Sequence record: NC_049340.1
DNA length: 64,000 bases
Reading direction: 5' to 3' (one strand)
Part shown: positions 32,265 through 40,466 of the stretch, piece after piece
How the letters are laid out: each line of letters opens with the position of its first letter
Position numbering within the stretch: position 1 is the first letter of the stretch
The notes under the pieces: model-generated
The model's input: the letters and a program-made list of their open reading frames with translations, nothing else
Told to the model about the DNA's origin: nothing
Databases searched by the model: none
Translations under genes and position numbers: made by a program

Positions 32265-32656
32265 CACTATTAAAAATACTAAAAACTGAACGAGAATTTG
32301 AACCACTATTTGAATTAGTTGAGTTCGACCCAAGAACAAACAAGCAAGTAAATAAAATACAGGAGTTCCATAAATTAGGAATCATGGTTGATTGTGATGG
32401 TGATTCTTGGATTGGATTAAAAACTGGTAAATACGATACAGTACAAACAAAATTCAATGAATATGTTTATAAGTGTAAAAATTCAGCATACCCACAAATG
32501 GCTGATAAAGTACGGTTATATGATATAACAAAAATGCCAAGTGATGATGTTGAGAAGTTATTAACACATAGCGGTATTGTAAAGAATCTATTAAATAAAA
32601 AAGAATATCCATACACACAAGGAACATCTTTTGATGAATATGAATTAGTTGAATAA
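32261..32656 (+). CDS. Hypothetical protein
   Basis: ORF track. Confidence 0.65.
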   Translation: MTLLKILKTEREFEPLFELVEFDPRTNKQVNKIQEFHKLGIMVDCDGDSWIGLKTGKYDTVQTKFNEYVYKCKNSAYPQMADKVRLYDITKMPSDDVEKLLTHSGIVKNLLNKKEYPYTQGTSFDEYELVE

Positions 32657-32669
32657 TAAATAAAAGTAA

Positions 32670-34295
32670 ATGAAAGGAATTATACAAACATGTAAGGTTG
32701 AATTAAAAATTAATGATAATAATTGGGCTATTTTAGTAACACCAATTGAAAATAAAGATGCATTAAGAAAAAATTATACAGAACCAAATGAACGTTTATT
32801 TTTGGTTCAGTTGATATTGTTAATGGAATTGTAATTGGTTTCGTTGATGAATATGGGTTAATACAACCACACAAACCAATTAAATTCAAACCAGTAGATT
32901 ATTTTTCAAGTTTATCAGATTATATTCTAAATTCTGATGGTACTGTAACACCTGAAATTGTAACCGATAAAATAATTAATTCATTACCTAAAGATGCTAT
33001 TAATGAAACGACTAAACTATTGGATATTTCGGCTAAACAAGGAGAGTTTGTATATGCTGTCTATAAGAAGTTTGGGAAAAAAGTAGCAAATAACTTTTAT
33101 TCTGTTCCTACTTCAAAAAATAGCTTATGAGTTTACTAGAAAAGTATATACACTTTTAGAATTAGATGTAAACAATATTGAAGAAAACTACACCTCATAC
33201 GATTTAATTGAAGAAAACGAATTAATTGTAGATGATAACTTATTAATAAACAACAACACTATGAAATTTGATATAATTGTCGGAAATCCACCTTATCAAC
33301 AAAAAGATGATGGTACGAATAAAAATAGTGCATCTCCTATTTATAATCAATTTGTTGATGTATCCAAATCTCTTAATCCTAAAAATATATCAATGATTAT
33401 ACCTACAAGATGGTATGCAGGTGGTAAAGGATTAGATTCATTTAGAGATGAAATGTTAGATGATATACATATTGAAGAATTACACGATTTCCTTAAGCCA
33501 GATTTAATTTTTCAAAATATTAATCTTAGAGGTGGTATTTGTTATTTTCTATGGAATGAAGATTATGATAATACAGAGAATTTAACAAAAGTATTTACAT
33601 ATCAAGATGATTTAAAACCAAAGCTAAATTCAAGACATTTAAGAACATCTGATTCTGACATACTTATTCGTCATAGTCTAGCAGTTGATATACTTAAAAA
33701 GGTAAAATCTTATTCTGGTTTTGAATCATTTGAAAGTTCTATTTCATCAAGAAAACCATTTGGCTTAGAAGGTAATATTGTTAAAAATCCAAGCGTTTTT
33801 AGACCAATTAAAAGTGGCTTGAAAAATTCTGTTATTTGTTATGGAAAAGGTATAAAAAAAGGCTATTTAGAAAGAGCAGAAATAACAAAAAATATAAATT
33901 GGATAGACAATTATAAAGTTTTTACACCAAGAGCAAACAACATTGGTACAGAATTAAATGATGATAATTTAAACACATTTATTGGTAAACCTAATACAAT
34001 TTGTACTGAATCTTATATTGTGGTAGGTGTTGATTTAAAATTAAACGAATTATCTGCATCAAACCTTTGTAAATTCTTTAAAACAAAATTTGCTAGATTT
34101 CAGCATAGTGTTGGAAAAGCAAGTCAAGATGCAACTTCCAAAACTTATAAATTTATTCCGCTTCAAGATTTTACTCCAAAATCAGACATAGATTGGACAA
34201 AAACTATAGAAGAAATAGACAGTCAATTATACAAAAAGTACAAACTAACAACCAAAGAAATAGAATTTATTGAAAGTATGATAAAACCAATGTAA
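32670..34295 (+). CDS. Chimeric N6-adenine DNA methyltransferase (Eco57I-like, gamma class): phage N-terminus fused to host MTase; two homopolymer frameshifts (~32800, ~33117)
   Basis: VTPEIVTDKII (motif X), LLDISAKQGEF (motif I), SKIAYEFTRKVY, GNPPY (motif IV), MIIPTRW. Confidence 0.75.
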
Positions 34296-34421
34296 ATATG
34301 GAGAATAGCCAACGCTAGATTAAAGCACATTTATTTTTTGCAAACGCTAAAAGCCAACGCACACAAAAAATAAAAAGAGCTTGTCCTTCCCTACCGTCAC
34401 CCATAGATAATGATAATTTTA

Positions 34422-34440
34422 ATACTCATTTGATGAGTAT
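34422..34440. promoter_or_regulatory. Palindromic operator upstream of XRE regulator
   Basis: ATACTCAT-ttg-ATGAGTAT perfect inverted repeat. Confidence 0.55.
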
Positions 34441-34488
34441 ATTTTAAAAATTTACTTAAATTAGTGGTCTGAATAAAAACAATTCAAA

Positions 34489-34689
34489 ATGAACCGAATA
34501 AAAGAGGTTTTAGAAGGAAAGGGAATAAAACAAATATGGTTAGCTGAACAGTTAGGCAAGAGCTACAATATGGTTCATTCCTATGTTCAAAATAAAAGAC
34601 AACCAAGTTTAGAAGACTTGTACAAAATAGCTAAAATATTGAATGTAGAAGTCAATGAATTATTAGTATCAATAAAAGAACTGAATTGA
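34489..34689 (+). CDS. XRE-family HTH regulator (controller-like)
   Basis: MNRIKEVL...WLAEQLGKS...RQPSLEDLYKIAKIL. Confidence 0.9.
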   Translation: MNRIKEVLEGKGIKQIWLAEQLGKSYNMVHSYVQNKRQPSLEDLYKIAKILNVEVNELLVSIKELN

Positions 34690-35693
34690 GTATACAAATA
34701 GACATATTAGAAAATGAAATATTAGAACAATATCCAAATGTTCTTGATATTCTACTACGTGATTATACCACAAAAAAAAATATAATTTGGGCAACTGAAA
34801 ACTACGAATATTTAGGGCAAACATACGAACAAACTAAACAAATTTTACCTGAACTTATTACAGGAGAAAACGGTAATTTAATAATTCCGAGAGTACAGAA
34901 AGATATAGTATTACAACTATCAAGAGTTAAAAATATGGCCGAAGTATTTACGCCATCTTGGGTTTGTAATGCTCAAAATAATTTAATAGACAATGCCTGG
35001 TTTCAAAAAGAAAACATTTTCAATACAGAAATTCAATTAACAAATGGTAATCCTTATTGGAAGGTAAATTCAAATAAAATCATCTTTCCTAAAGACAAAA
35101 CTTGGCAAGATTATATAAGTGATAAACGTTTAGAAATTACTTGCGGAGAAGCACCATATATTACAAGTCGTTATGATACTACTACGGGAATATTTATTCC
35201 AATAAATGAAAGAATTGGACTTTTAGACCGAAAACTTAGAGTAATCAATGAAAATGTTGATTCAGAAAATAATTGGTTAAAAGCTGTAAAGATAGCTTTT
35301 GAAAGCACATATGCTTTTGAGTGGCAAGGTGATAGTTTATTGTTAGCTCGTGAAGCTATGCTATTCACGTTTATAGAAAACTTCAAACTAAAATTCAACA
35401 AAGAACCTTTATTGAAATCTATTCAAGATATAGCATATATCATTTCTTGGAATGTTTGGCAAATGGACGGTTTAAAAGGTGTCGTTCCAAATTCGTGTGC
35501 TTCTGAAAGTACTATAACAACAAATCTTTTTGGAGAAATTGTAACAAAAAATTCCATTTGCTTAGGTTGTAACAAAAATGAAATCACAAAACATAATGGT
35601 TCTTATTGCATAATAAAAGATTGGACTAAAAAAGACAGTACTTCAAATAAAATGGGAAAAACAATTAAATATATAGACCTACTTCAACAATAA
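34686..35693 (+). CDS. R-M-associated SAM-binding protein ('restriction endonuclease subunit M' type)
   Basis: AEVFTPSWVC, LEITCGEAPY, YAFEWQGD, SWNVWQMDG. Confidence 0.75.
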   Translation: MSIQIDILENEILEQYPNVLDILLRDYTTKKNIIWATENYEYLGQTYEQTKQILPELITGENGNLIIPRVQKDIVLQLSRVKNMAEVFTPSWVCNAQNNLIDNAWFQKENIFNTEIQLTNGNPYWKVNSNKIIFPKDKTWQDYISDKRLEITCGEAPYITSRYDTTTGIFIPINERIGLLDRKLRVINENVDSENNWLKAVKIAFESTYAFEWQGDSLLLAREAMLFTFIENFKLKFNKEPLLKSIQDIAYIISWNVWQMDGLKGVVPNSCASESTITTNLFGEIVTKNSICLGCNKNEITKHNGSYCIIKDWTKKDSTSNKMGKTIKYIDLLQQ

Positions 35694-35697
35694 AATT

Positions 35698-35757
35698 ATG
35701 TCAAATAACAAAATAGATATAGATGTACTAAATGATATGATTGTTGGTAGAGTGTAA
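35698..35757 (+). pseudogene. First 19 codons of a large R-M nuclease/helicase subunit (truncated)
   Basis: MSNNKIDIDVLNDMIVGRV*, resembling the IIVGRVEPHIY N-terminus that follows subunit M, as recalled. Confidence 0.5.
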
Positions 35758-35854
35758 GTAATGAAATTTTTTGACTGCAATAAACATAAATGGCAAGACT
35801 GTGAATGTACCACAGAATGTCGAAGAGGAAATAAAGAATTAAAAACAGAAGAAC

Positions 35855-36421
35855 ATGAAAAAAGTAACGTATTATTTTGCGACACAATTAAAGGACGTAG
35901 ATAATAAATTCCAAGAAGCACAAGTATCCATTCCATCAACATCATTACATTTTGATGATATTGATACACATGCACGAGGATTAGAAACAGAAAGACACGT
36001 AACCTTATATTTTAGTGTTACAGAGAATGACCATATATCATTGGTTAACCTTGAAGCTGGATTAAGACATGTAGTACCACAAGTTGATTTAGATACAGAG
36101 GTTGAAATAACCGATGTTTTTGTATTCAAGACAGATAAGTATGAGGCTATTGTTGCTAAGACAAACAATGAATCACTTAATGAGGTGAACGCAAAGTTGG
36201 TTAGTCATATGATGTTATATGGTATTGAACCAATGAGGAAAGAATTTAAACAACACGTAACATTAGGTTATGTTAAAGTTGGTGAATCTGATAAATTAAT
36301 ACCACAATTAAAAGATAAATTAGTTGGAACTAAATTTATTGTTGATGTTTTTAAGACCGCTAGAACCGACAAAGCGGAAACATATAAAACAAAGGTTGAA
36401 ACTGAATTAAAATTTGTGTAA
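35855..36421 (+). CDS. 2H phosphoesterase, T4 gp57B/Acb1-like
   Basis: GLETERHVTL and FKQHVTLGYVKVG, two HxT motifs. Confidence 0.75.
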   Translation: MKKVTYYFATQLKDVDNKFQEAQVSIPSTSLHFDDIDTHARGLETERHVTLYFSVTENDHISLVNLEAGLRHVVPQVDLDTEVEITDVFVFKTDKYEAIVAKTNNESLNEVNAKLVSHMMLYGIEPMRKEFKQHVTLGYVKVGESDKLIPQLKDKLVGTKFIVDVFKTARTDKAETYKTKVETELKFV

Positions 36422-36501
36422 TATGTTTAAGTGGAATCAAGAGGCTGATACATTCGCATAATATTATTTATTCAACAGACGTATCCAAAGATTATAATTA
36501 C

Positions 36502-36936
36502 ATGTGTTCTGCATTAACTTCACAAATTAATTATAACGAATCACAAGTTGAAATTGACGAACAGGAAGAGTTTATTGATTATGAAGATAGTGAAAATTAT
36601 TACCACTTTAAAGATATTATAAAGGAAGTGGAGATTGAACACTCAAAAATTTCATACTCACAACCAATAACCAATAATAAAAATCAATCAGATTATTTAA
36701 CATCGGTTGCCATATTCTTTACACAAGCACCATCTAAGTATGATATTGAGGTTATTATACAAAGTCTTAGAAAGTTTATAGACCATCCAACAGTTAAGGT
36801 TCTTGGTTTGCGTGTAGCATCATTAAAAGAAACTGGATTTATTGAACCATTCTATGATTTAGTATTACAGGAATATGATGTTGATTCATCTATGTTAAGT
36901 ACAACACATGCAAAATATTTAAACGAATTACAATAA
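36502..36936 (+). CDS. Hypothetical protein
   Basis: ORF track. Confidence 0.6.
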   Translation: MCSALTSQINYNESQVEIDEQEEFIDYEDSENYYHFKDIIKEVEIEHSKISYSQPITNNKNQSDYLTSVAIFFTQAPSKYDIEVIIQSLRKFIDHPTVKVLGLRVASLKETGFIEPFYDLVLQEYDVDSSMLSTTHAKYLNELQ

Positions 36937-36939
36937 ATA

Positions 36940-37125
36940 GGGTATTAGACAGTCGAAAGTCAATGCTTAAATTATCGTGAAGAGTCGAAGCCTAGTAACA
37001 TGTTATATGGCAGGGAAGTCACCTAGTGGAAATGCATGAAAGTAGAAATACAAAGTCGAGTACGAATGGTGAACTATGTACGAGGTAAAGGCGTAGCGTA
37101 AGTTCAAATCTTACATAACATGTTA
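36940..37125 (+). ncRNA. Candidate structured RNA with tRNA-like T-arm
   Basis: GC-richer intergenic tract; 11-bp stem 36996-37006/37115-37125 next to GTAAG-TTCAAAT-CTTAC. Confidence 0.45.
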
Positions 37126-37128
37126 TAT

Positions 37129-37159
37129 AAAACACCACCCAAATTTGGTGGTGTTTGTT
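37129..37159 (+). terminator. Intrinsic terminator
   Basis: aaacaccacc-caaattt-ggtggtgttt. Confidence 0.75.
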
Positions 37160-37188
37160 TTATACATTAAAATAAAAACTTATACAAT

Positions 37189-38631
37189 ATGAATACATTA
37201 ATTATTGATGGTACATTCATGGCGCAACGTAACCGTAATGCAGGTGGATTTACTTTCTTAGATAACCCAAACCGTGACCGAGCCGAGTTATTAGAGGGGT
37301 TAGCAAACACAATTGTTGCTGAAATGAATCAATTTAAAGGTTTAATTTCACGTGTTGTTTGGTGTTTGGATTACTCTTCATGGAGAAAAAATATATCACC
37401 AGTTTTACCATTAGGTATGGATAATATAGGTGGTGATGCAGACTATAAAGCAAACCGTGACCATTCAGATTACGACTCAGCTAAATTTTGGGATGCTGTT
37501 AACGAATTTACTGAAATGTTATCAAAGGCTGGTGTTTGTGTAATTAAACAATATGGTGCTGAGGCTGATGATTCATCATATATAGCATCTAGAATATTAT
37601 CTAATAAAGGATTGAAGTCTATTCTATGGTCATCAGATGGTGATTATAAATCATTCGTAGAACCAAATGTTTTATTATTTAAAATGCCTAAGAGGGAACT
37701 ATATAAGATACCAACAGAAAAGAAAAACTTAATGGAGTCTGTGTTTGGTGGTGGTGTTGACCCAACAAATCAAATAATTGAATCAGCAGGTGGTCAAAGT
37801 TTGGTACATGAAGTGCATCCATTATACTTTGTTTTAGAGCAGATTGTTAGAGGTCAGAAAAAAGATAATATACCACCATTAATTCAATGGTTATCATCAA
37901 CTGGAACAAGACAATACAGACCATCAGAAACACACGTCAAAAAGACATTAAGTGAGTTAAATTTAACACAAAAAGATTTAACCGAGGATATGTTATATGA
38001 TGAATCATTTATTAGTTCATTTGTGCGTAAATTATTACCAATAACAAAAGTTGATGGTTCTCTTAAAATTAAAAAAATAACTAAGAAGTCGTTAGTTGAT
38101 TATAACATAATTTTAAAGAAAGGTATTGATACTTACGAAAGTCCTGTTGATGAAAATGCTTATGACTTTAATGTGTTATCACACTTAATGCATGTACTTA
38201 CCGAAGAATTAAACTTAGTAATGACCAATACAACATTAAGTAATGCATATGATAAAATCATTAACCAACAACCAACAAATGAAAATGTTAATGATGCATT
38301 AAAATCTATTGGTGTTGATAACTTCAACTACACACTATTATTTGACCCAGCATTTTTATCTGAGTTACATAGAATTTGTTACACTAATAAAGTTGTTGAA
38401 CATAGCTTAGGTGTTTGGGCATCTTCTAGAAAATTAGCATATGTTTCTAAAAAAGAAATACCAAGTGATTTGTGGGAATCTTGTACAAAAACTTTAATAA
38501 GTGAGTTCAAAACAAAGAAGTTAGATAAATCAAAATTTAAAAGTGGTCAGTCATTAATGGCAACAGTTGCACCAAAACAAAATGATGGTTCATTCTTTGG
38601 TAACTTCAATTTAGAAGATGTTGACTTATGA
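37189..38631 (+). CDS. rnh: 5'-3' exonuclease/RNase H (T4 rnh, FEN-like)
   Basis: LIIDG, WCLD..SWRK, YKANR, EADD, SSDGD, GQKKDNIP. Confidence 0.8.
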   Translation: MNTLIIDGTFMAQRNRNAGGFTFLDNPNRDRAELLEGLANTIVAEMNQFKGLISRVVWCLDYSSWRKNISPVLPLGMDNIGGDADYKANRDHSDYDSAKFWDAVNEFTEMLSKAGVCVIKQYGAEADDSSYIASRILSNKGLKSILWSSDGDYKSFVEPNVLLFKMPKRELYKIPTEKKNLMESVFGGGVDPTNQIIESAGGQSLVHEVHPLYFVLEQIVRGQKKDNIPPLIQWLSSTGTRQYRPSETHVKKTLSELNLTQKDLTEDMLYDESFISSFVRKLLPITKVDGSLKIKKITKKSLVDYNIILKKGIDTYESPVDENAYDFNVLSHLMHVLTEELNLVMTNTTLSNAYDKIINQQPTNENVNDALKSIGVDNFNYTLLFDPAFLSELHRICYTNKVVEHSLGVWASSRKLAYVSKKEIPSDLWESCTKTLISEFKTKKLDKSKFKSGQSLMATVAPKQNDGSFFGNFNLEDVDL

Positions 38632-38882: not shown

Positions 38883-40466
38883 ATGAAACAAAATTTAGAT
38901 ATACTAAGATATATTTTAGAGAATGGTGATGAAAAATCTGATAGAACTGGTGTAGGAACTATATCATGTTTTGGATTACAAATGCAACCAATTGACCTTA
39001 GAAAAGGTTTTCCGATAGAAACAACAAAGAAGATATTTTTTGATTCTGTAATACATGAAAATCTTTGGTTTTTAATGGGTACTGATAGGATAGATTATTT
39101 AGAGGAAAATGGTGTATCAATATGGAGGGATTGGTGTCCTATAAGTGGTAAGTATTTTAGAGATAAAAGAGTAATCGGATTAGTTGGTAAGAAAAAAGAT
39201 AAAACATTCAAACTAGTTAAAGATTTTAAATACCCTACAGAATTTAGGAAAGATGAATCTAGTATAGATTATCATTTGGCTGGTATTTGGCATAAAATGA
39301 TGAATAGGTGTTATAATAAAAAATCACATAATTATAGATTTTATGGTGGTAAGGGTGTTACTGTACATAATGATTGGCAAGATTGTGAAACATTTATCAG
39401 AGAATCTAAAGAAATTTTCAACTGGGATAACAAACTTGAAGATTGGAATGATTATCAATTAGATAAAGATTATTATAGTTCAAATTACTATTCTAAAGAA
39501 ACTTGTATTTGGTTACATAGATTAGAAAATTCAATTTACACTACAGAATTTAAACCATTTAAGTTAATAATAAACGGTAAATCTATTACTTGTTTAACAA
39601 CAAAAGAAGCTGAAATAAAAAGTGGAATACCTTGGACTAATTTAAATAGATGGTCTAATAATGGTATTTCTGACAGATGTGATTTGAAATATAGGTGGAT
39701 TAAAAATATAAAAATAGAATATTTACCTAAATATAAAACTAGAAATTATAGATTACTCTTTAGAATTGGTTCAGTAGGTGCAATGTATGGTGTTCAATGG
39801 AATAAATGGAAAACATCAGATGGTAAAGAAATCAATCAAATACAAAATATGATTGATAGACTAAAGAATAATCCTGATTGTAGAAGAAATATTGTAACTT
39901 CTTGGAATCCTGAAACTGTTCCAGTAGATGGATTATCATTTGAAGAGAATATCGCTAATGGTAAGGGTGCATTAGCTAATTGTCATGGATTCTTTCAAGT
40001 GTATACAGCAAAAGTTTTTGGTAGTGAGCGAATGGAGTTATTCAAAAAAGAATATCCTGATAAGTATATGAAAGAAGTCTATGAAGATGTACCACAATCA
40101 AAATTCGATGAATATTTAGATAGTGTTGGATTCCCATCAAGATATTTAGATATGAAAATGTATCAAAGAAGTTGTGATGCTTTCATTGGTAAATTCTTTA
40201 ATACAGCAGGTTACTCACTTTTAATGCATATGATTGGTCAAGTTGTTAATATGATTCCTAGATACTTTATACATTCTTTTGGTGATGTTCATATTTATAA
40301 GAATCACATAGAACAAGTAAAGTTACAGTTAAGTAGGGATGAAAGACCGATACCAACTTTAAAACTTAATAAGGATATAAAAAATATTTATGACTTCAAA
40401 TTTGAAGATATTGAACTAATTGGATATGACCCACACCCATGGATTAAAGCACCAATTGCAATATAA
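38883..40466 (+). CDS. thyA: Thymidylate synthase with in-frame HNH-type endonuclease insertion
   Basis: DRTGVGT, IWRDW, ALANCH, YQRSCD, GDVHIY..H; ~209-aa insert between IWRDW and GSVGAMYG. Confidence 0.9.
   Translation: MKQNLDILRYILENGDEKSDRTGVGTISCFGLQMQPIDLRKGFPIETTKKIFFDSVIHENLWFLMGTDRIDYLEENGVSIWRDWCPISGKYFRDKRVIGLVGKKKDKTFKLVKDFKYPTEFRKDESSIDYHLAGIWHKMMNRCYNKKSHNYRFYGGKGVTVHNDWQDCETFIRESKEIFNWDNKLEDWNDYQLDKDYYSSNYYSKETCIWLHRLENSIYTTEFKPFKLIINGKSITCLTTKEAEIKSGIPWTNLNRWSNNGISDRCDLKYRWIKNIKIEYLPKYKTRNYRLLFRIGSVGAMYGVQWNKWKTSDGKEINQIQNMIDRLKNNPDCRRNIVTSWNPETVPVDGLSFEENIANGKGALANCHGFFQVYTAKVFGSERMELFKKEYPDKYMKEVYEDVPQSKFDEYLDSVGFPSRYLDMKMYQRSCDAFIGKFFNTAGYSLLMHMIGQVVNMIPRYFIHSFGDVHIYKNHIEQVKLQLSRDERPIPTLKLNKDIKNIYDFKFEDIELIGYDPHPWIKAPIAI
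39138..39764 (+). mobile_element. In-frame HNH-type endonuclease domain within ThyA (boundaries approximate)
   Basis: WHKMMNRCY...YGGKGVTV...W, LDKDYYSSNYYSKETCIW...N, NUMOD1/HTH-like tail. Confidence 0.75.

What the first reader, a model, noticed from the sequence alone, without database searches (positions are those of the whole stretch)
32900..35757. Captured host R-M cassette in apparently permuted order with the nuclease removed
Order here: [C-terminal MTase part of the large subunit] - HTH - subunit M - [first 19 codons of the large subunit]. From memory, bacterial loci run HTH, subunit M, large nuclease/helicase, MTase, so both ends of the insert would lie in the same gene. That implies capture from a circular or tandem donor with loss of the restriction part, leaving a protective methylation module for anti-restriction.
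Basis: partly seen in the sequence, partly recalled or inferred. Interest (0 to 1): 0.7.

Follow-up and report, generated by a model that had tools for sequence, protein, structure and literature searches.

The report
Permuted host restriction-modification cassette in phage
A jumbo phage of a fish pathogen carries a 2.8-kb piece of a bacterial restriction-modification cassette whose gene order shows it was copied from a head-to-tail (circular or tandem) form, losing the DNA-cutting motor but keeping the parts that can make a protective DNA methylase.

Summary
The window is Tenacibaculum phage PTm1. Window 32944-35753 is a fragment of a Bacteroidota cassette whose native order in 257 other loci is always [HTH]-M-Large. 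Large is about 1,319 aa: T5orf172 nuclease-like domain, SF2 helicase, Eco57I-type methylase, specificity domain.

The phage has Large codons ~870-1319, then HTH, then M, then Large codons 1-19. Codons 20-869, the nuclease and helicase, are missing.

Two metagenome loci match the two arms at about 97%. One (L262) matches the methylase arm through the stop codon into its own downstream flanking repeat. The other (L003) matches from the upstream flanking repeat through HTH, M and the stub. The phage spacer is therefore a hybrid downstream/upstream repeat. That is the joint expected of a circle or head-to-tail tandem.

The fragment replaced about 177 codons of a phage gene, which PTm5 keeps intact as a paralogue, through short microhomologies.

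M and ORF-277 are intact. Together they tile, end to end, single-chain adenine methylases found elsewhere, so a two-piece protective methylase is likely but untested. The anti-restriction function remains an inference.

The parts
32670..32949 (+). Remnant of phage gene 'B' (RefSeq ORF-276 and its continuation). It holds the N-terminal ~94 codons, is broken by one frameshift, and is truncated by the insertion.
   Evidence: 78%-identical paralogous copy in PTm5 continues as an intact 273-aa gene (L093 5323-6144).
32944..32949 (+). Left junction. GTAACA microhomology is shared by phage gene B and the donor large gene.
   Evidence: Three-way comparison of PTm1, PTm5 B and L003/L262.
32944..34295 (+). 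C-terminal fragment of the cassette's large gene (codons ~870-1319: Eco57I-type methylase plus specificity domain). It has one frameshift relative to intact homologues.
   Evidence: 97.5% nt identity to L262 3993-5343. The phage part is 1 nt longer than L262's intact ORF. tblastn gives two frames. PADLOC PDLC03626 is hit from ~867 to 1359.
33261..34295 (+). ORF-277, 344 aa, intact. It is the 'module': catalytic motif IV (NPPY at residue 9) plus the target-recognition domain. Its bounds match free-standing 341-344-aa module genes in other loci.
   Evidence: Pfam Eco57I 4e-21. Aligns to residues 325-668 of the single-chain methylase P0258. Natural separate module genes occur in L260/L261/L259. 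dN/dS 0.20 against L262.
34296..34360 (+). Spacer, first part. It derives from the cassette's downstream flanking repeat (DR-R) and holds both window copies of GCCAACGC (34308-34315, 34353-34360).
   Evidence: Colinear with the sequence that follows the large-gene stop in L262/L263. The motif occurs twice in 64 kb against 0.08 expected.
34361..34382 (+). Block shared by the downstream and upstream repeats. This is the interval in which the DR-R x DR-L crossover lies.
   Evidence: The module-arm alignment to L262 ends at 34382, and the HTH-arm alignments overlap it.
34383..34488 (+). Spacer, second part. It derives from the upstream flanking repeat (DR-L) and the HTH promoter region, with the palindrome ATACTCAT-TTG-ATGAGTAT at 34422-34440 (probable controller-protein operator).
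   Evidence: 93-99% identical to L003 upstream of HTH. The palindrome is conserved in L003, L009, L052, L061, L074 and L262.
34489..34689 (+). HTH_3 (Xre/C-protein type) regulator, 66 aa, intact. It overlaps M by 4 nt, as in bacterial loci.
   Evidence: Pfam HTH_3 5.7e-11. The protein is identical to L003's. The arrangement is the same in L003, L009 and L262.
34686..35693 (+). 'Subunit M', 335 aa, intact. It is inferred to be the AdoMet-binding N-terminal half of a gamma-class adenine methylase (EVFTPSW at 86-92; LEITCGEAPY at 149-158). It has no NPPY motif of its own.
   Evidence: PADLOC PDLC03390 6e-113. 51% identity to residues 7-315 of the fused methylase P0258. The P0258 model matches CamA, BrxX and M.TaqI. 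dN/dS 0.25 against L003.
35698..35757 (+). Stub. It is the first 19 codons of the large gene and stands 4 nt after the M stop, as in donors. Donor homology ends at 35753, and the stop codon is supplied by phage sequence.
   Evidence: 100% identical to L003 1487-1542.
35754..35761 (+). Right flank. These are the last 8 nt of phage gene B. The window then continues colinear with PTm5 downstream of its intact B.
   Evidence: Window 35754-38500 = L093 6137-8872 at 99.2%.

Best explanation
Window 32944-35753 is a circularly permuted fragment of a Bacteroidota restriction-modification cassette that has lost its nuclease.

The cassette's native form is upstream repeat (DR-L), HTH, M, Large, downstream repeat (DR-R). 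Large is one protein of about 1,319 aa: T5orf172 nuclease-like domain, SF2 helicase, Eco57I-type adenine methylase, specificity domain.

Shown: the phage holds Large codons ~870-1319 with its stop codon, then a single hybrid repeat that begins as DR-R and ends as DR-L, then HTH, M and Large codons 1-19.

Inferred: such a joint is made when the two roughly 100-bp imperfect direct repeats that flank the cassette recombine. The template was therefore an excised circle or a head-to-tail tandem copy. Two microhomology joins (GTAACA on the left, about 3 nt on the right) put the segment in place of about 177 codons of a phage gene and left out codons 20-869.

Inferred function: the HTH regulator, M and ORF-277 are intact. 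M supplies the AdoMet-binding half, and ORF-277 supplies the catalytic NPPY motif plus the specificity half. The two would act as a two-piece adenine methylase that marks phage DNA at the site recognised by the cognate restriction enzyme of hosts carrying this cassette.
For: Identity of the window.

Domain content of Large.

Both ends of the insert lie in one gene.

Native order is always [HTH]-M-Large. No module lies upstream of M in 257 loci, 136 of which have at least 2 kb upstream.

Flanking repeats are conserved in six genera or MAGs.

Near-donor loci:
- Window 32944-34382 = L262 at 97.5%, running through the stop codon and 87 nt of DR-R.
- Window 34383-35753 = L003 at 97.2%.
- The crossover lies in the shared block 34361-34382.

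GCCAACGC occurs only in the spacer: 2 copies against 0.08 expected.

Empty-site evidence and microhomologies come from the intact PTm5 paralogue.

Function:
- ORF-279 and ORF-277 tile P0258 residues 7-315 and 325-668.
- The P0258 model has pLDDT 85.8 and matches CamA at E 3.6e-15 over about 690 columns, and also BrxX, M.BseCI and M.TaqI.
- 38 of the 150 best cluster representatives are such fusions.
- Natural loci have M and the module as separate neighbouring genes: L260/L261, and the phage-like contig L259.
- dN/dS is 0.20-0.25, and the HTH protein is identical to L003's.
- Both frameshifts fall in the roughly 200 codons outside HTH, M and ORF-277.
Against: - No circle or tandem copy was seen directly in any of the 257 loci.
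- The two arms have different closest relatives (L262 and L003). The donor was therefore a mosaic not yet sampled, or two cassette variants were involved.
- Methylation of phage DNA is untested.
- M alone gives a mediocre model (pLDDT 64) with no fold match. It has no Pfam or PDB sequence match, and hhalign to the Eco57I-type domain gives 1%.
- Some records name M homologues 'restriction endonuclease'.
- The large subunit's own AdoMet-binding stretch is cut off from ORF-277 by a frameshift.
- No Tenacibaculum genome was among the 80 best genome loci, though only 80 of 394 were kept.
Confidence: 0.72

Rival explanations
1. The head-to-tail form arose inside the phage. A whole linear cassette was first inserted in gene B. 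It was then duplicated in tandem by unequal exchange between its flanking repeats during concatemeric replication. Two deletions then removed the nuclease/helicase parts and the extra HTH-M copy.
For: This gives the same hybrid repeat joint. The locus is demonstrably prone to duplication and illegitimate exchange in this phage lineage: PTm5 has a 211-bp duplication flanking a foreign 930-bp segment joined at an 11-nt microhomology.
Against: It needs at least four events against one or two. No intermediate was found: only PTm1 and PTm5 exist in the phage collections, and both carry the final form.
Confidence: 0.2
2. There were two separate captures. A fragment with the module and its downstream repeat came from an L262-like cassette. 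A fragment with the upstream repeat, HTH, M and stub came from an L003-like cassette. The two were joined in the phage through the block the two repeats share.
For: The two arms have different closest relatives. The module arm is 97.5% identical to L262. The HTH-M arm is 97.2% identical to L003 but only 91.6% to L262.
Against: L003 and L262 are themselves mosaics of each other: 98-100% identical in the middle of the large gene and 78-92% elsewhere. A single donor combining both arms is therefore expected. Two independent illegitimate captures landing side by side, in the same orientation, with ends in the same gene, is improbable.
Confidence: 0.08
3. The donor has this linear order natively, and the two ends come from different genes.
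For: Free-standing or spare 341-351-aa module ORFs do exist in bacteria.
Against: In every locus examined they lie downstream of M or of Large, never upstream of HTH/M. The phage fragment also carries about 105 codons of the large subunit upstream of the module, and it runs through the stop codon into L262's downstream repeat.
Confidence: 0.02
4. The insert is decaying cargo without function. M and ORF-277 are intact only because the capture is recent.
For: There are two frameshifts in the composite reading frame. The phage M differs at 2 of 123 columns that are invariant in 26 homologues. Divergence from the nearest bacterial copies is about 2.5%, and it may all predate capture.
Against: 745 codons (ORF-277, HTH, M) remain open in a 27-29% G+C genome where random frames close quickly. 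Both frameshifts lie in the roughly 199 of 944 codons outside them; a rough chance of about 0.04 if placed at random. PTm1 and PTm5 both keep the ORFs. The same pair, M plus module without the nuclease, recurs in L006-8, L095 and phage-like L259.
Confidence: 0.25
5. The permuted order is an assembly artefact.
For: None specific.
Against: Two separately deposited genomes (PTm1, PTm5) share the arrangement at 99.96% identity, although they differ just downstream of it. The junctions show clean microhomologies.
Confidence: 0.02

Closest known systems
Restriction-modification units flanked by long direct repeats that can amplify (Furuta, Abe and Kobayashi, NAR 2010, PMC2853133)
   Same: The cassette has no transposase or integrase of its own. 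It is bounded by roughly 100-bp imperfect direct repeats that travel with it into different genomic contexts. The paper proposes insertion, amplification through the repeats and release, and notes that there is no evidence for release.
   Different: Here the repeats are only about 60-65% alike. They are conserved across genera as part of the unit rather than being a duplicated target. The evidence for a head-to-tail form is a fossil joint inside a phage, not an observed amplification.
Phage capture of a methylase domain from a host R-M system (lactococcal phage phi50 and the LlaI methylase of pTR2030; recalled from my own knowledge, not retrieved here)
   Same: A lytic phage acquires only the protective methylase part of a host restriction system.
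   Different: The PTm1 fragment is permuted. It carries the regulator, and its methylase is in two pieces. No phenotype is known.
Type ISP / Type IIG single-polypeptide enzymes (LlaGI-like order nuclease-helicase-methylase-TRD, from my own knowledge; PADLOC REase_MTase_IIG PDLC03626)
   Same: The donor large subunit has the same domain order, and it hits the IIG profile end to end.
   Different: The nuclease is T5orf172-like rather than Mrr. The system has an extra conserved partner (M) and an HTH regulator. The phage keeps only codons 1-19 and ~870-1319.
DnmA-YeeB-YeeC (MmeI-like methylase + helicase + T5orf172 protein; PMC9973331)
   Same: The same three activities occur. In B. subtilis the methylase survives as an orphan from a relic system.
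   Different: Those are separate genes in a different order, and there is no M partner. No sequence relationship was tested here.
Gamma-class N6-adenine methylases CamA, M.TaqI, M.BseCI and BrxX/PglX (PDB 7lni, 2np6, 7qw6, 9ewz)
   Same: The model of the fused M+module homologue P0258 matches them at E 1e-8 to 4e-15. The NPPY motif is present in ORF-277.
   Different: In the phage the fold would have to be assembled from two polypeptides encoded in reverse order. Sequence identity to the solved structures is 10-13%.
Heterodimeric (split) DNA methylases such as M.AquI and M.EcoHK31I (from my own knowledge)
   Same: The catalytic domain is divided between two polypeptides.
   Different: Those are cytosine-5 methylases. 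No split of this adenine-methylase family has been described, to my knowledge, and assembly was not tested here.

Membership tests
Complete Type IIG/ISP-like R-M system (PADLOC PDLC03626 + PDLC03390) | Large subunit with nuclease and helicase/translocase domains | tested here: not met
   The phage retains only profile positions ~867-1359 and 19 N-terminal codons. T5orf172 and ResIII are absent.
Complete Type IIG/ISP-like R-M system (PADLOC PDLC03626 + PDLC03390) | Gene order [HTH]-M-Large | tested here: not met
   The phage order is Large C-terminal part, HTH, M, Large N-terminal stub. All 257 other loci have the native order.
Gamma-class N6-adenine DNA methylase (Pfam Eco57I PF07669) | Catalytic motif IV (NPPY) followed by a target-recognition domain | tested here: met
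   ORF-277 has NPPY at residue 9, Pfam Eco57I at 4e-21, and a full-length match to PADLOC PDLC03375.
Gamma-class N6-adenine DNA methylase (Pfam Eco57I PF07669) | AdoMet-binding motifs X and I-III in the same polypeptide as motif IV | tested here: not met
   ORF-277 starts 7 residues before NPPY. The large subunit's own upstream stretch is in another frame. These motifs could only be supplied in trans by ORF-279.
Two-piece (split) methylase M + module | The two ORFs together cover a single-chain homologue with a complete methylase fold | tested here: met
   ORF-279 matches P0258 7-315 and ORF-277 matches P0258 325-668. The P0258 model matches CamA, M.TaqI and BrxX.
Two-piece (split) methylase M + module | Natural loci with M and module as separate adjacent genes | tested here: met
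   L260/L261 have M 316 aa, module 341 aa and helicase subunit 1107 aa. L259 has M 327 aa and module 344 aa.
Two-piece (split) methylase M + module | Physical assembly and methyl transfer | not testable with these tools
Controller (C) protein regulated R-M unit | Small HTH protein upstream of and overlapping the next gene, with a palindromic operator upstream | tested here: met
   HTH_3, 66 aa, with a 4-nt overlap with M. An 8+3+8 palindrome lies at 34422-34440 and is conserved in bacterial loci. Binding was not tested.
R-M unit with long flanking direct repeats (PMC2853133) | Direct repeats longer than 30 bp on both sides of the unit | tested here: met
   Upstream and downstream elements of about 100 nt align with each other in L009, L052, L061, L074, L078, L083 and L262. 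The local-alignment z scores alone are modest. The shared blocks are clear in the multiple alignment.
R-M unit with long flanking direct repeats (PMC2853133) | Tandem or circular copies joined through one repeat | tested here: inconclusive
   The phage joint has exactly this structure. No such copy was found in 257 bacterial, metagenomic or viral loci.
Phase-variable specificity shufflon | Inverted silent module next to the expressed gene | tested here: not met
   This is seen in L126, L127 and L129. It is not in the phage: there is a single module and no long inverted repeat.
Phage orphan methylase used against restriction | Methylase without cognate nuclease on a phage genome | tested here: met
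Phage orphan methylase used against restriction | Phage DNA modified at the site of a host restriction enzyme | not testable with these tools
   There is no methylome. No Tenacibaculum locus was among the 80 best genome hits.

The most novel reading that the evidence does not exclude
The hybrid repeat in PTm1 may be a molecular fossil of the free circular (or amplified tandem) form of a self-mobile restriction-modification unit. That is the 'release' stage which the virus-like life-cycle model of R-M units predicts but for which the cited paper says evidence is lacking.

The same locus also suggests what the very widespread, highly conserved 'restriction endonuclease subunit M' of this family is. 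It may be the AdoMet-binding half of a split adenine methylase that borrows the catalytic/specificity module of the restriction subunit, for example as a separately made 344-aa product. Modification and restriction would then share one specificity domain.
Probability: 0.3. Interest if true: 0.75.

Novelty: new variant of a known kind. Interest (0 to 1): 0.6.

Why it matters
Phages that carry methylases taken from host restriction systems are known. This case is different because the fragment records how it was taken.

The gene order and the hybrid flanking repeat show that the template was a head-to-tail form of the cassette. The intact paralogue in the sister phage gives both junctions at base resolution. 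That is rare sequence-level evidence for a circular or amplified intermediate of an R-M unit that has no recombinase of its own.

The comparison also gives a testable role to a protein family with thousands of members and no Pfam domain ('subunit M'). It would be one half of a two-piece adenine methylase.

For phage-host biology, the fragment predicts which hosts PTm1 is pre-adapted to: those carrying a cassette with the L262-type specificity domain.

Tried and rejected
**Tested and rejected**
- Native linear order in donors. No case was found in 257 loci.
- The 461-aa homologues P0121 and P0124 as in-frame stub-module fusions. They start at an internal Met of the large protein, so they are fragments.
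- The Bifidobacterium plasmid as a natural three-gene system. Its fused M-module gene is simply split by IS256.
- The apparent protein similarity just left of 32944 as cassette-derived. It is phage sequence, as the PTm5 paralogue shows.
- The lower identity of the module arm to L003 as a sign of a different donor lineage. The drop is confined to the specificity region, and L262 matches the whole arm at 97.5%.

**Led nowhere**
- M alone: no Pfam, NCBIfam or PDB sequence match, a poor AF2 model, no Foldseek hit, and hhalign probability 1%.
- Relatives of PTm1 lacking the insert: none in the phage collection or IMG/VR.
- Sigma-70 promoter and terminator scan, and Rfam: nothing above chance.
- No flanking repeats at the insert ends beyond the microhomologies.
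- The PTm1 description paper is not in the library. I could not check whether its authors noticed the permutation, or which sequencing platform they used.

- my first notebook entry;
- the references I sent;
- one line printed.

Full report
**Identity and anatomy**

The window is Tenacibaculum phage PTm1, a 224,680-bp jumbo phage. Window 32600-35900 equals record positions 193280-196580 at 100%, and PTm5 carries the same stretch.

On the + strand lie:
- ORF-277 (33261-34295, 344 aa);
- an HTH_3 regulator (34489-34689);
- ORF-279 (34686-35693, 335 aa), named 'restriction endonuclease subunit M' in RefSeq and 'type II restriction endonuclease' in the original record;
- an unannotated 19-codon ORF (35698-35757).

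ORF-277 starts seven residues before an NPPY motif. It matches the last 349 positions of PADLOC's 1,359-position REase_MTase_IIG profile. Sequence upstream of it matches earlier positions of the same profile, from about 867, but in another frame. G+C content shows no step, because the donors are equally A+T-rich (29-30%).

**What the cassette looks like in bacteria**

Homologues of ORF-279 number in the thousands and are about 65-70% identical across Bacteroidota. I fetched 257 loci that carry one, from metagenome look-ups, one genome per species, IMG/VR, JGI metagenomes and plasmids. I classified them with tblastn probes.

The native order is always [HTH]-M-Large. Large is a protein of about 1,315-1,320 aa with:
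- T5orf172 at residues 24-124;
- ResIII helicase from residue 157;
- an N6-adenine methylase (N6_Mtase/Eco57I) at 868-1058;
- a C-terminal specificity region.

This is the domain order of Type ISP enzymes (my own knowledge). PADLOC labels the family Type IIG.

None of the 136 loci with at least 2 kb upstream of M has a methylase module there.

**Both ends lie in one gene**

blastn against the closest loci shows this directly.
- The stub and everything back to the region upstream of HTH are colinear with L003 (window 34364-35753 = L003 153-1542, 97.1%).
- The left arm begins at codon ~870 of the same gene (window 32944 onward = L003 4096 onward).

L003's identity on the left arm drops to 64-89% only in the specificity region and is 92-100% on either side of it.

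A search with L003's large protein found P0391 and its loci L262/L263. These match window 32944-34382 at 97.5% without any drop, including the specificity region. The right arm is 97.2% identical to L003 and 91.6% to L262. L003 and L262 are mosaics of each other, 98-100% identical in the middle of the large gene and 78-92% elsewhere. An unsampled donor combining both arms is therefore plausible.

**The joint**

In bacterial loci the cassette is bounded by two related elements of about 100 nt. One lies about 60-190 nt upstream of HTH (DR-L). The other starts at or just after the large-gene stop (DR-R). Both contain GCCAAC(C)GC-type motifs, an ACATTT block and an AAAAGAG block.

They are conserved in Nonlabens, Polaribacter, Altibacter, Maribacter, Mesonia and an Ichthyobacteriaceae MAG, although the surrounding genes differ. 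Pairwise local scores between the two elements are only modestly above shuffles. The multiple alignment shows the shared blocks.

In L262 the match to the phage runs through the stop codon and 87 nt into L262's DR-R, ending at window 34382. From 34383 on, the phage follows DR-L of L003. The 22 nt at 34361-34382 are common to both repeats.

The phage spacer is thus one hybrid repeat, DR-R on the left and DR-L on the right. That is what recombination between the two flanking repeats produces in an excised circle or at the junction of a head-to-tail duplication. GCCAACGC occurs twice in the 64-kb window, both times in this spacer, against 0.08 expected.

Whether the head-to-tail form existed in the donor cell or arose after a whole cassette had entered the phage cannot be decided. 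The first needs fewer events.

**Insertion site**

PTm5 differs from PTm1 just to the right of the cassette.
- It has an extra segment of about 930 bp, flanked by a duplicated 211 bp (window 35754-35964).
- The segment is 78% identical to window 32542-32959.
- It continues as an intact 273-aa gene (L093 5323-6144).

This paralogue shows that the sequence left of the insert (window 32670-32949) is the N-terminal ~94 codons of a phage gene, here called B. It also shows that the 8 nt right of the stub are the end of B.

The cassette fragment therefore replaced about 177 codons of B.
- The left join lies in a GTAACA shared by B and the donor.
- The right join shows about 3 nt of possible microhomology.

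Counting breaks:
- Gene B is truncated by the replacement and carries one frameshift.
- The large gene lacks codons 20-869, is permuted, and its retained part carries one frameshift. That part is 1 nt longer than L262's intact ORF.
- HTH, M and ORF-277 have no breaks.
- PTm1 and PTm5 share all of this.

**What is left, and what it may do**

M has no Pfam, NCBIfam or PDB sequence match. Its own AF2 model is mediocre and finds no fold match, and hhalign against the Eco57I-type domain gives only the E-V-F-T-P motif.

An exhaustive profile search found 2,149 relatives. 38 of the 150 best representatives carry an M-like N-terminal part followed in the same chain by a GNPPY-type motif. In five tested fusions, Pfam places Eco57I directly after the M part.

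The two phage ORFs tile such a chain end to end.
- ORF-279 residues 5-318 align to P0258 7-315 (51% identity).
- ORF-277 residues 1-344 align to P0258 325-668 (36% identity).

The AF2 model of P0258 has pLDDT 85.8 and pTM 0.84. It matches the adenine methylases CamA (E 3.6e-15, about 690 alignment columns), BrxX/PglX, M.BseCI and M.TaqI.

I infer that M is the AdoMet-binding half (EVFTPSW and LEITCGEAPY motifs). ORF-277 would be the catalytic and recognition half of one methylase.

M and a 341-344-aa module also occur as separate adjacent genes:
- in L260/L261, followed by a 1,107-aa helicase subunit;
- in a phage-like 125-kb contig, L259, without any helicase subunit.

Derivatives without the helicase occur in linear order in L006-8 and L095. 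ORF-277 has the same bounds as these natural module genes.

dN/dS is 0.20 for ORF-277 against L262 and 0.25 for M against L003, and the HTH protein is identical to L003's. These values may reflect history before capture.

Both frameshifts fall in the roughly 199 of 944 codons outside the three intact ORFs. That has a chance of about 0.04 if placed at random. This is my rough estimate and is not corrected for anything.

The likely function is self-methylation of phage DNA against the cognate restriction enzyme. This is inferred, not shown.

**Unexplained**

In L006-8 the large gene has an internal deletion that joins codon ~15 to a point within about 3 nt of the phage's left junction, in linear order and out of frame. 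That lineage is only 73% identical to the phage, so the events are independent.

The site lies in a short tandem repeat (GAAATTGTAAC twice, encoding EIVTP-EIVT) that resembles the N-terminal codons. It may be a microhomology hot spot, or selection may favour these domain boundaries. I could not decide between the two.

It is also unclear what M does in canonical loci, where Large has its own AdoMet-binding stretch.

**Comparison and novelty**

Capture of host methylases by phages is known, and so are R-M units with long flanking repeats that amplify (PMC2853133). The new elements here are:
- the permuted fragment with a hybrid repeat joint;
- the base-level junctions;
- the reading of 'subunit M' as half of a split methylase.

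The PTm1 genome is public and annotates the three genes separately. I could not read its description paper.

An early note, the references sent, and one line printed used sub-piece coordinates that bracket the frameshift in the retained methylase part.

Noticed in passing
L093 5196-6136 (PTm5, AP019525 about 197695-198635); window 35754-35964 is the duplicated stretch: PTm5 has an extra segment of about 930 bp right of the cassette. It is a 78%-identical copy of window 32542-32959 that continues as an intact 273-aa gene, flanked by a duplicated 211 bp. It is joined at an 11-nt microhomology that creates a chimeric ORF (PTm5_ORF-278). It looks like exchange with a diverged relative that lacked the cassette.
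   Followed up: partly
L006 9677-9760 (also L007, L008): A bacterial locus has an internal deletion of the large gene whose two endpoints lie within about 3 and about 12 nt of the two ends of the phage insert. It is in linear order and out of frame, in a lineage only 73% identical to the phage.
   Followed up: partly
L126 13250-14218, L127 4999-6024, L129 12984-14018 (IMG/VR contigs): An inverted second copy of the 344-aa module lies directly after the large gene. This resembles a shufflon-like arrangement for switching specificity. L009/L010/L054 have a direct spare copy that is 99-100% identical at its start and 65-74% identical in the middle.
   Followed up: partly
L259 5951-8035 (Logan SRR20632228 contig, 125 kb): A phage-like contig (NrdD, SSB, dUTPase, RNA ligase genes) carries M (327 aa) directly followed by a 344-aa module and no helicase subunit. 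This is a second phage-borne M+module pair, in the native order.
   Followed up: partly
L134-L173 (IMG/VR, mostly sample 3300045988, contigs of about 55-60 kb): About 40 viral contigs carry a shorter relative of M (matching residues 20-270 at 40-43%) with no detectable large gene or module next to it.
   Followed up: no
window 38883-40466: The thymidylate synthase ORF has 527 aa, yet its Pfam match spans the whole 266-position profile from residue 3 to 527. It therefore holds an insertion of about 260 aa. RefSeq names the gene 'HNH endonuclease'.
   Followed up: partly
window 35855-36421: The ORF right of the insert gives weak hits to 2'-5' RNA ligase / LigT-like phosphoesterase families, below Pfam's cut-off.
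   Followed up: no
L257 4080-9735: In one metagenome locus a GmrSD-type (Type IV restriction) gene sits between M and the module gene, and the helicase subunit is split in two ORFs.
   Followed up: no
L256 5917-9391 (Bifidobacterium longum plasmid NZ_CP065398): An IS256 insertion splits a fused M-module methylase gene. The pieces are annotated as 'restriction endonuclease subunit M' and 'Eco57I ... domain-containing protein'.
   Followed up: partly
L262 5682-9741: The near-donor contig carries, next to the cassette, an AAA_15/DUF4276 gene pair and a tyrosine integrase. The cassette therefore sits in what looks like a defence island or integrative element.
   Followed up: no
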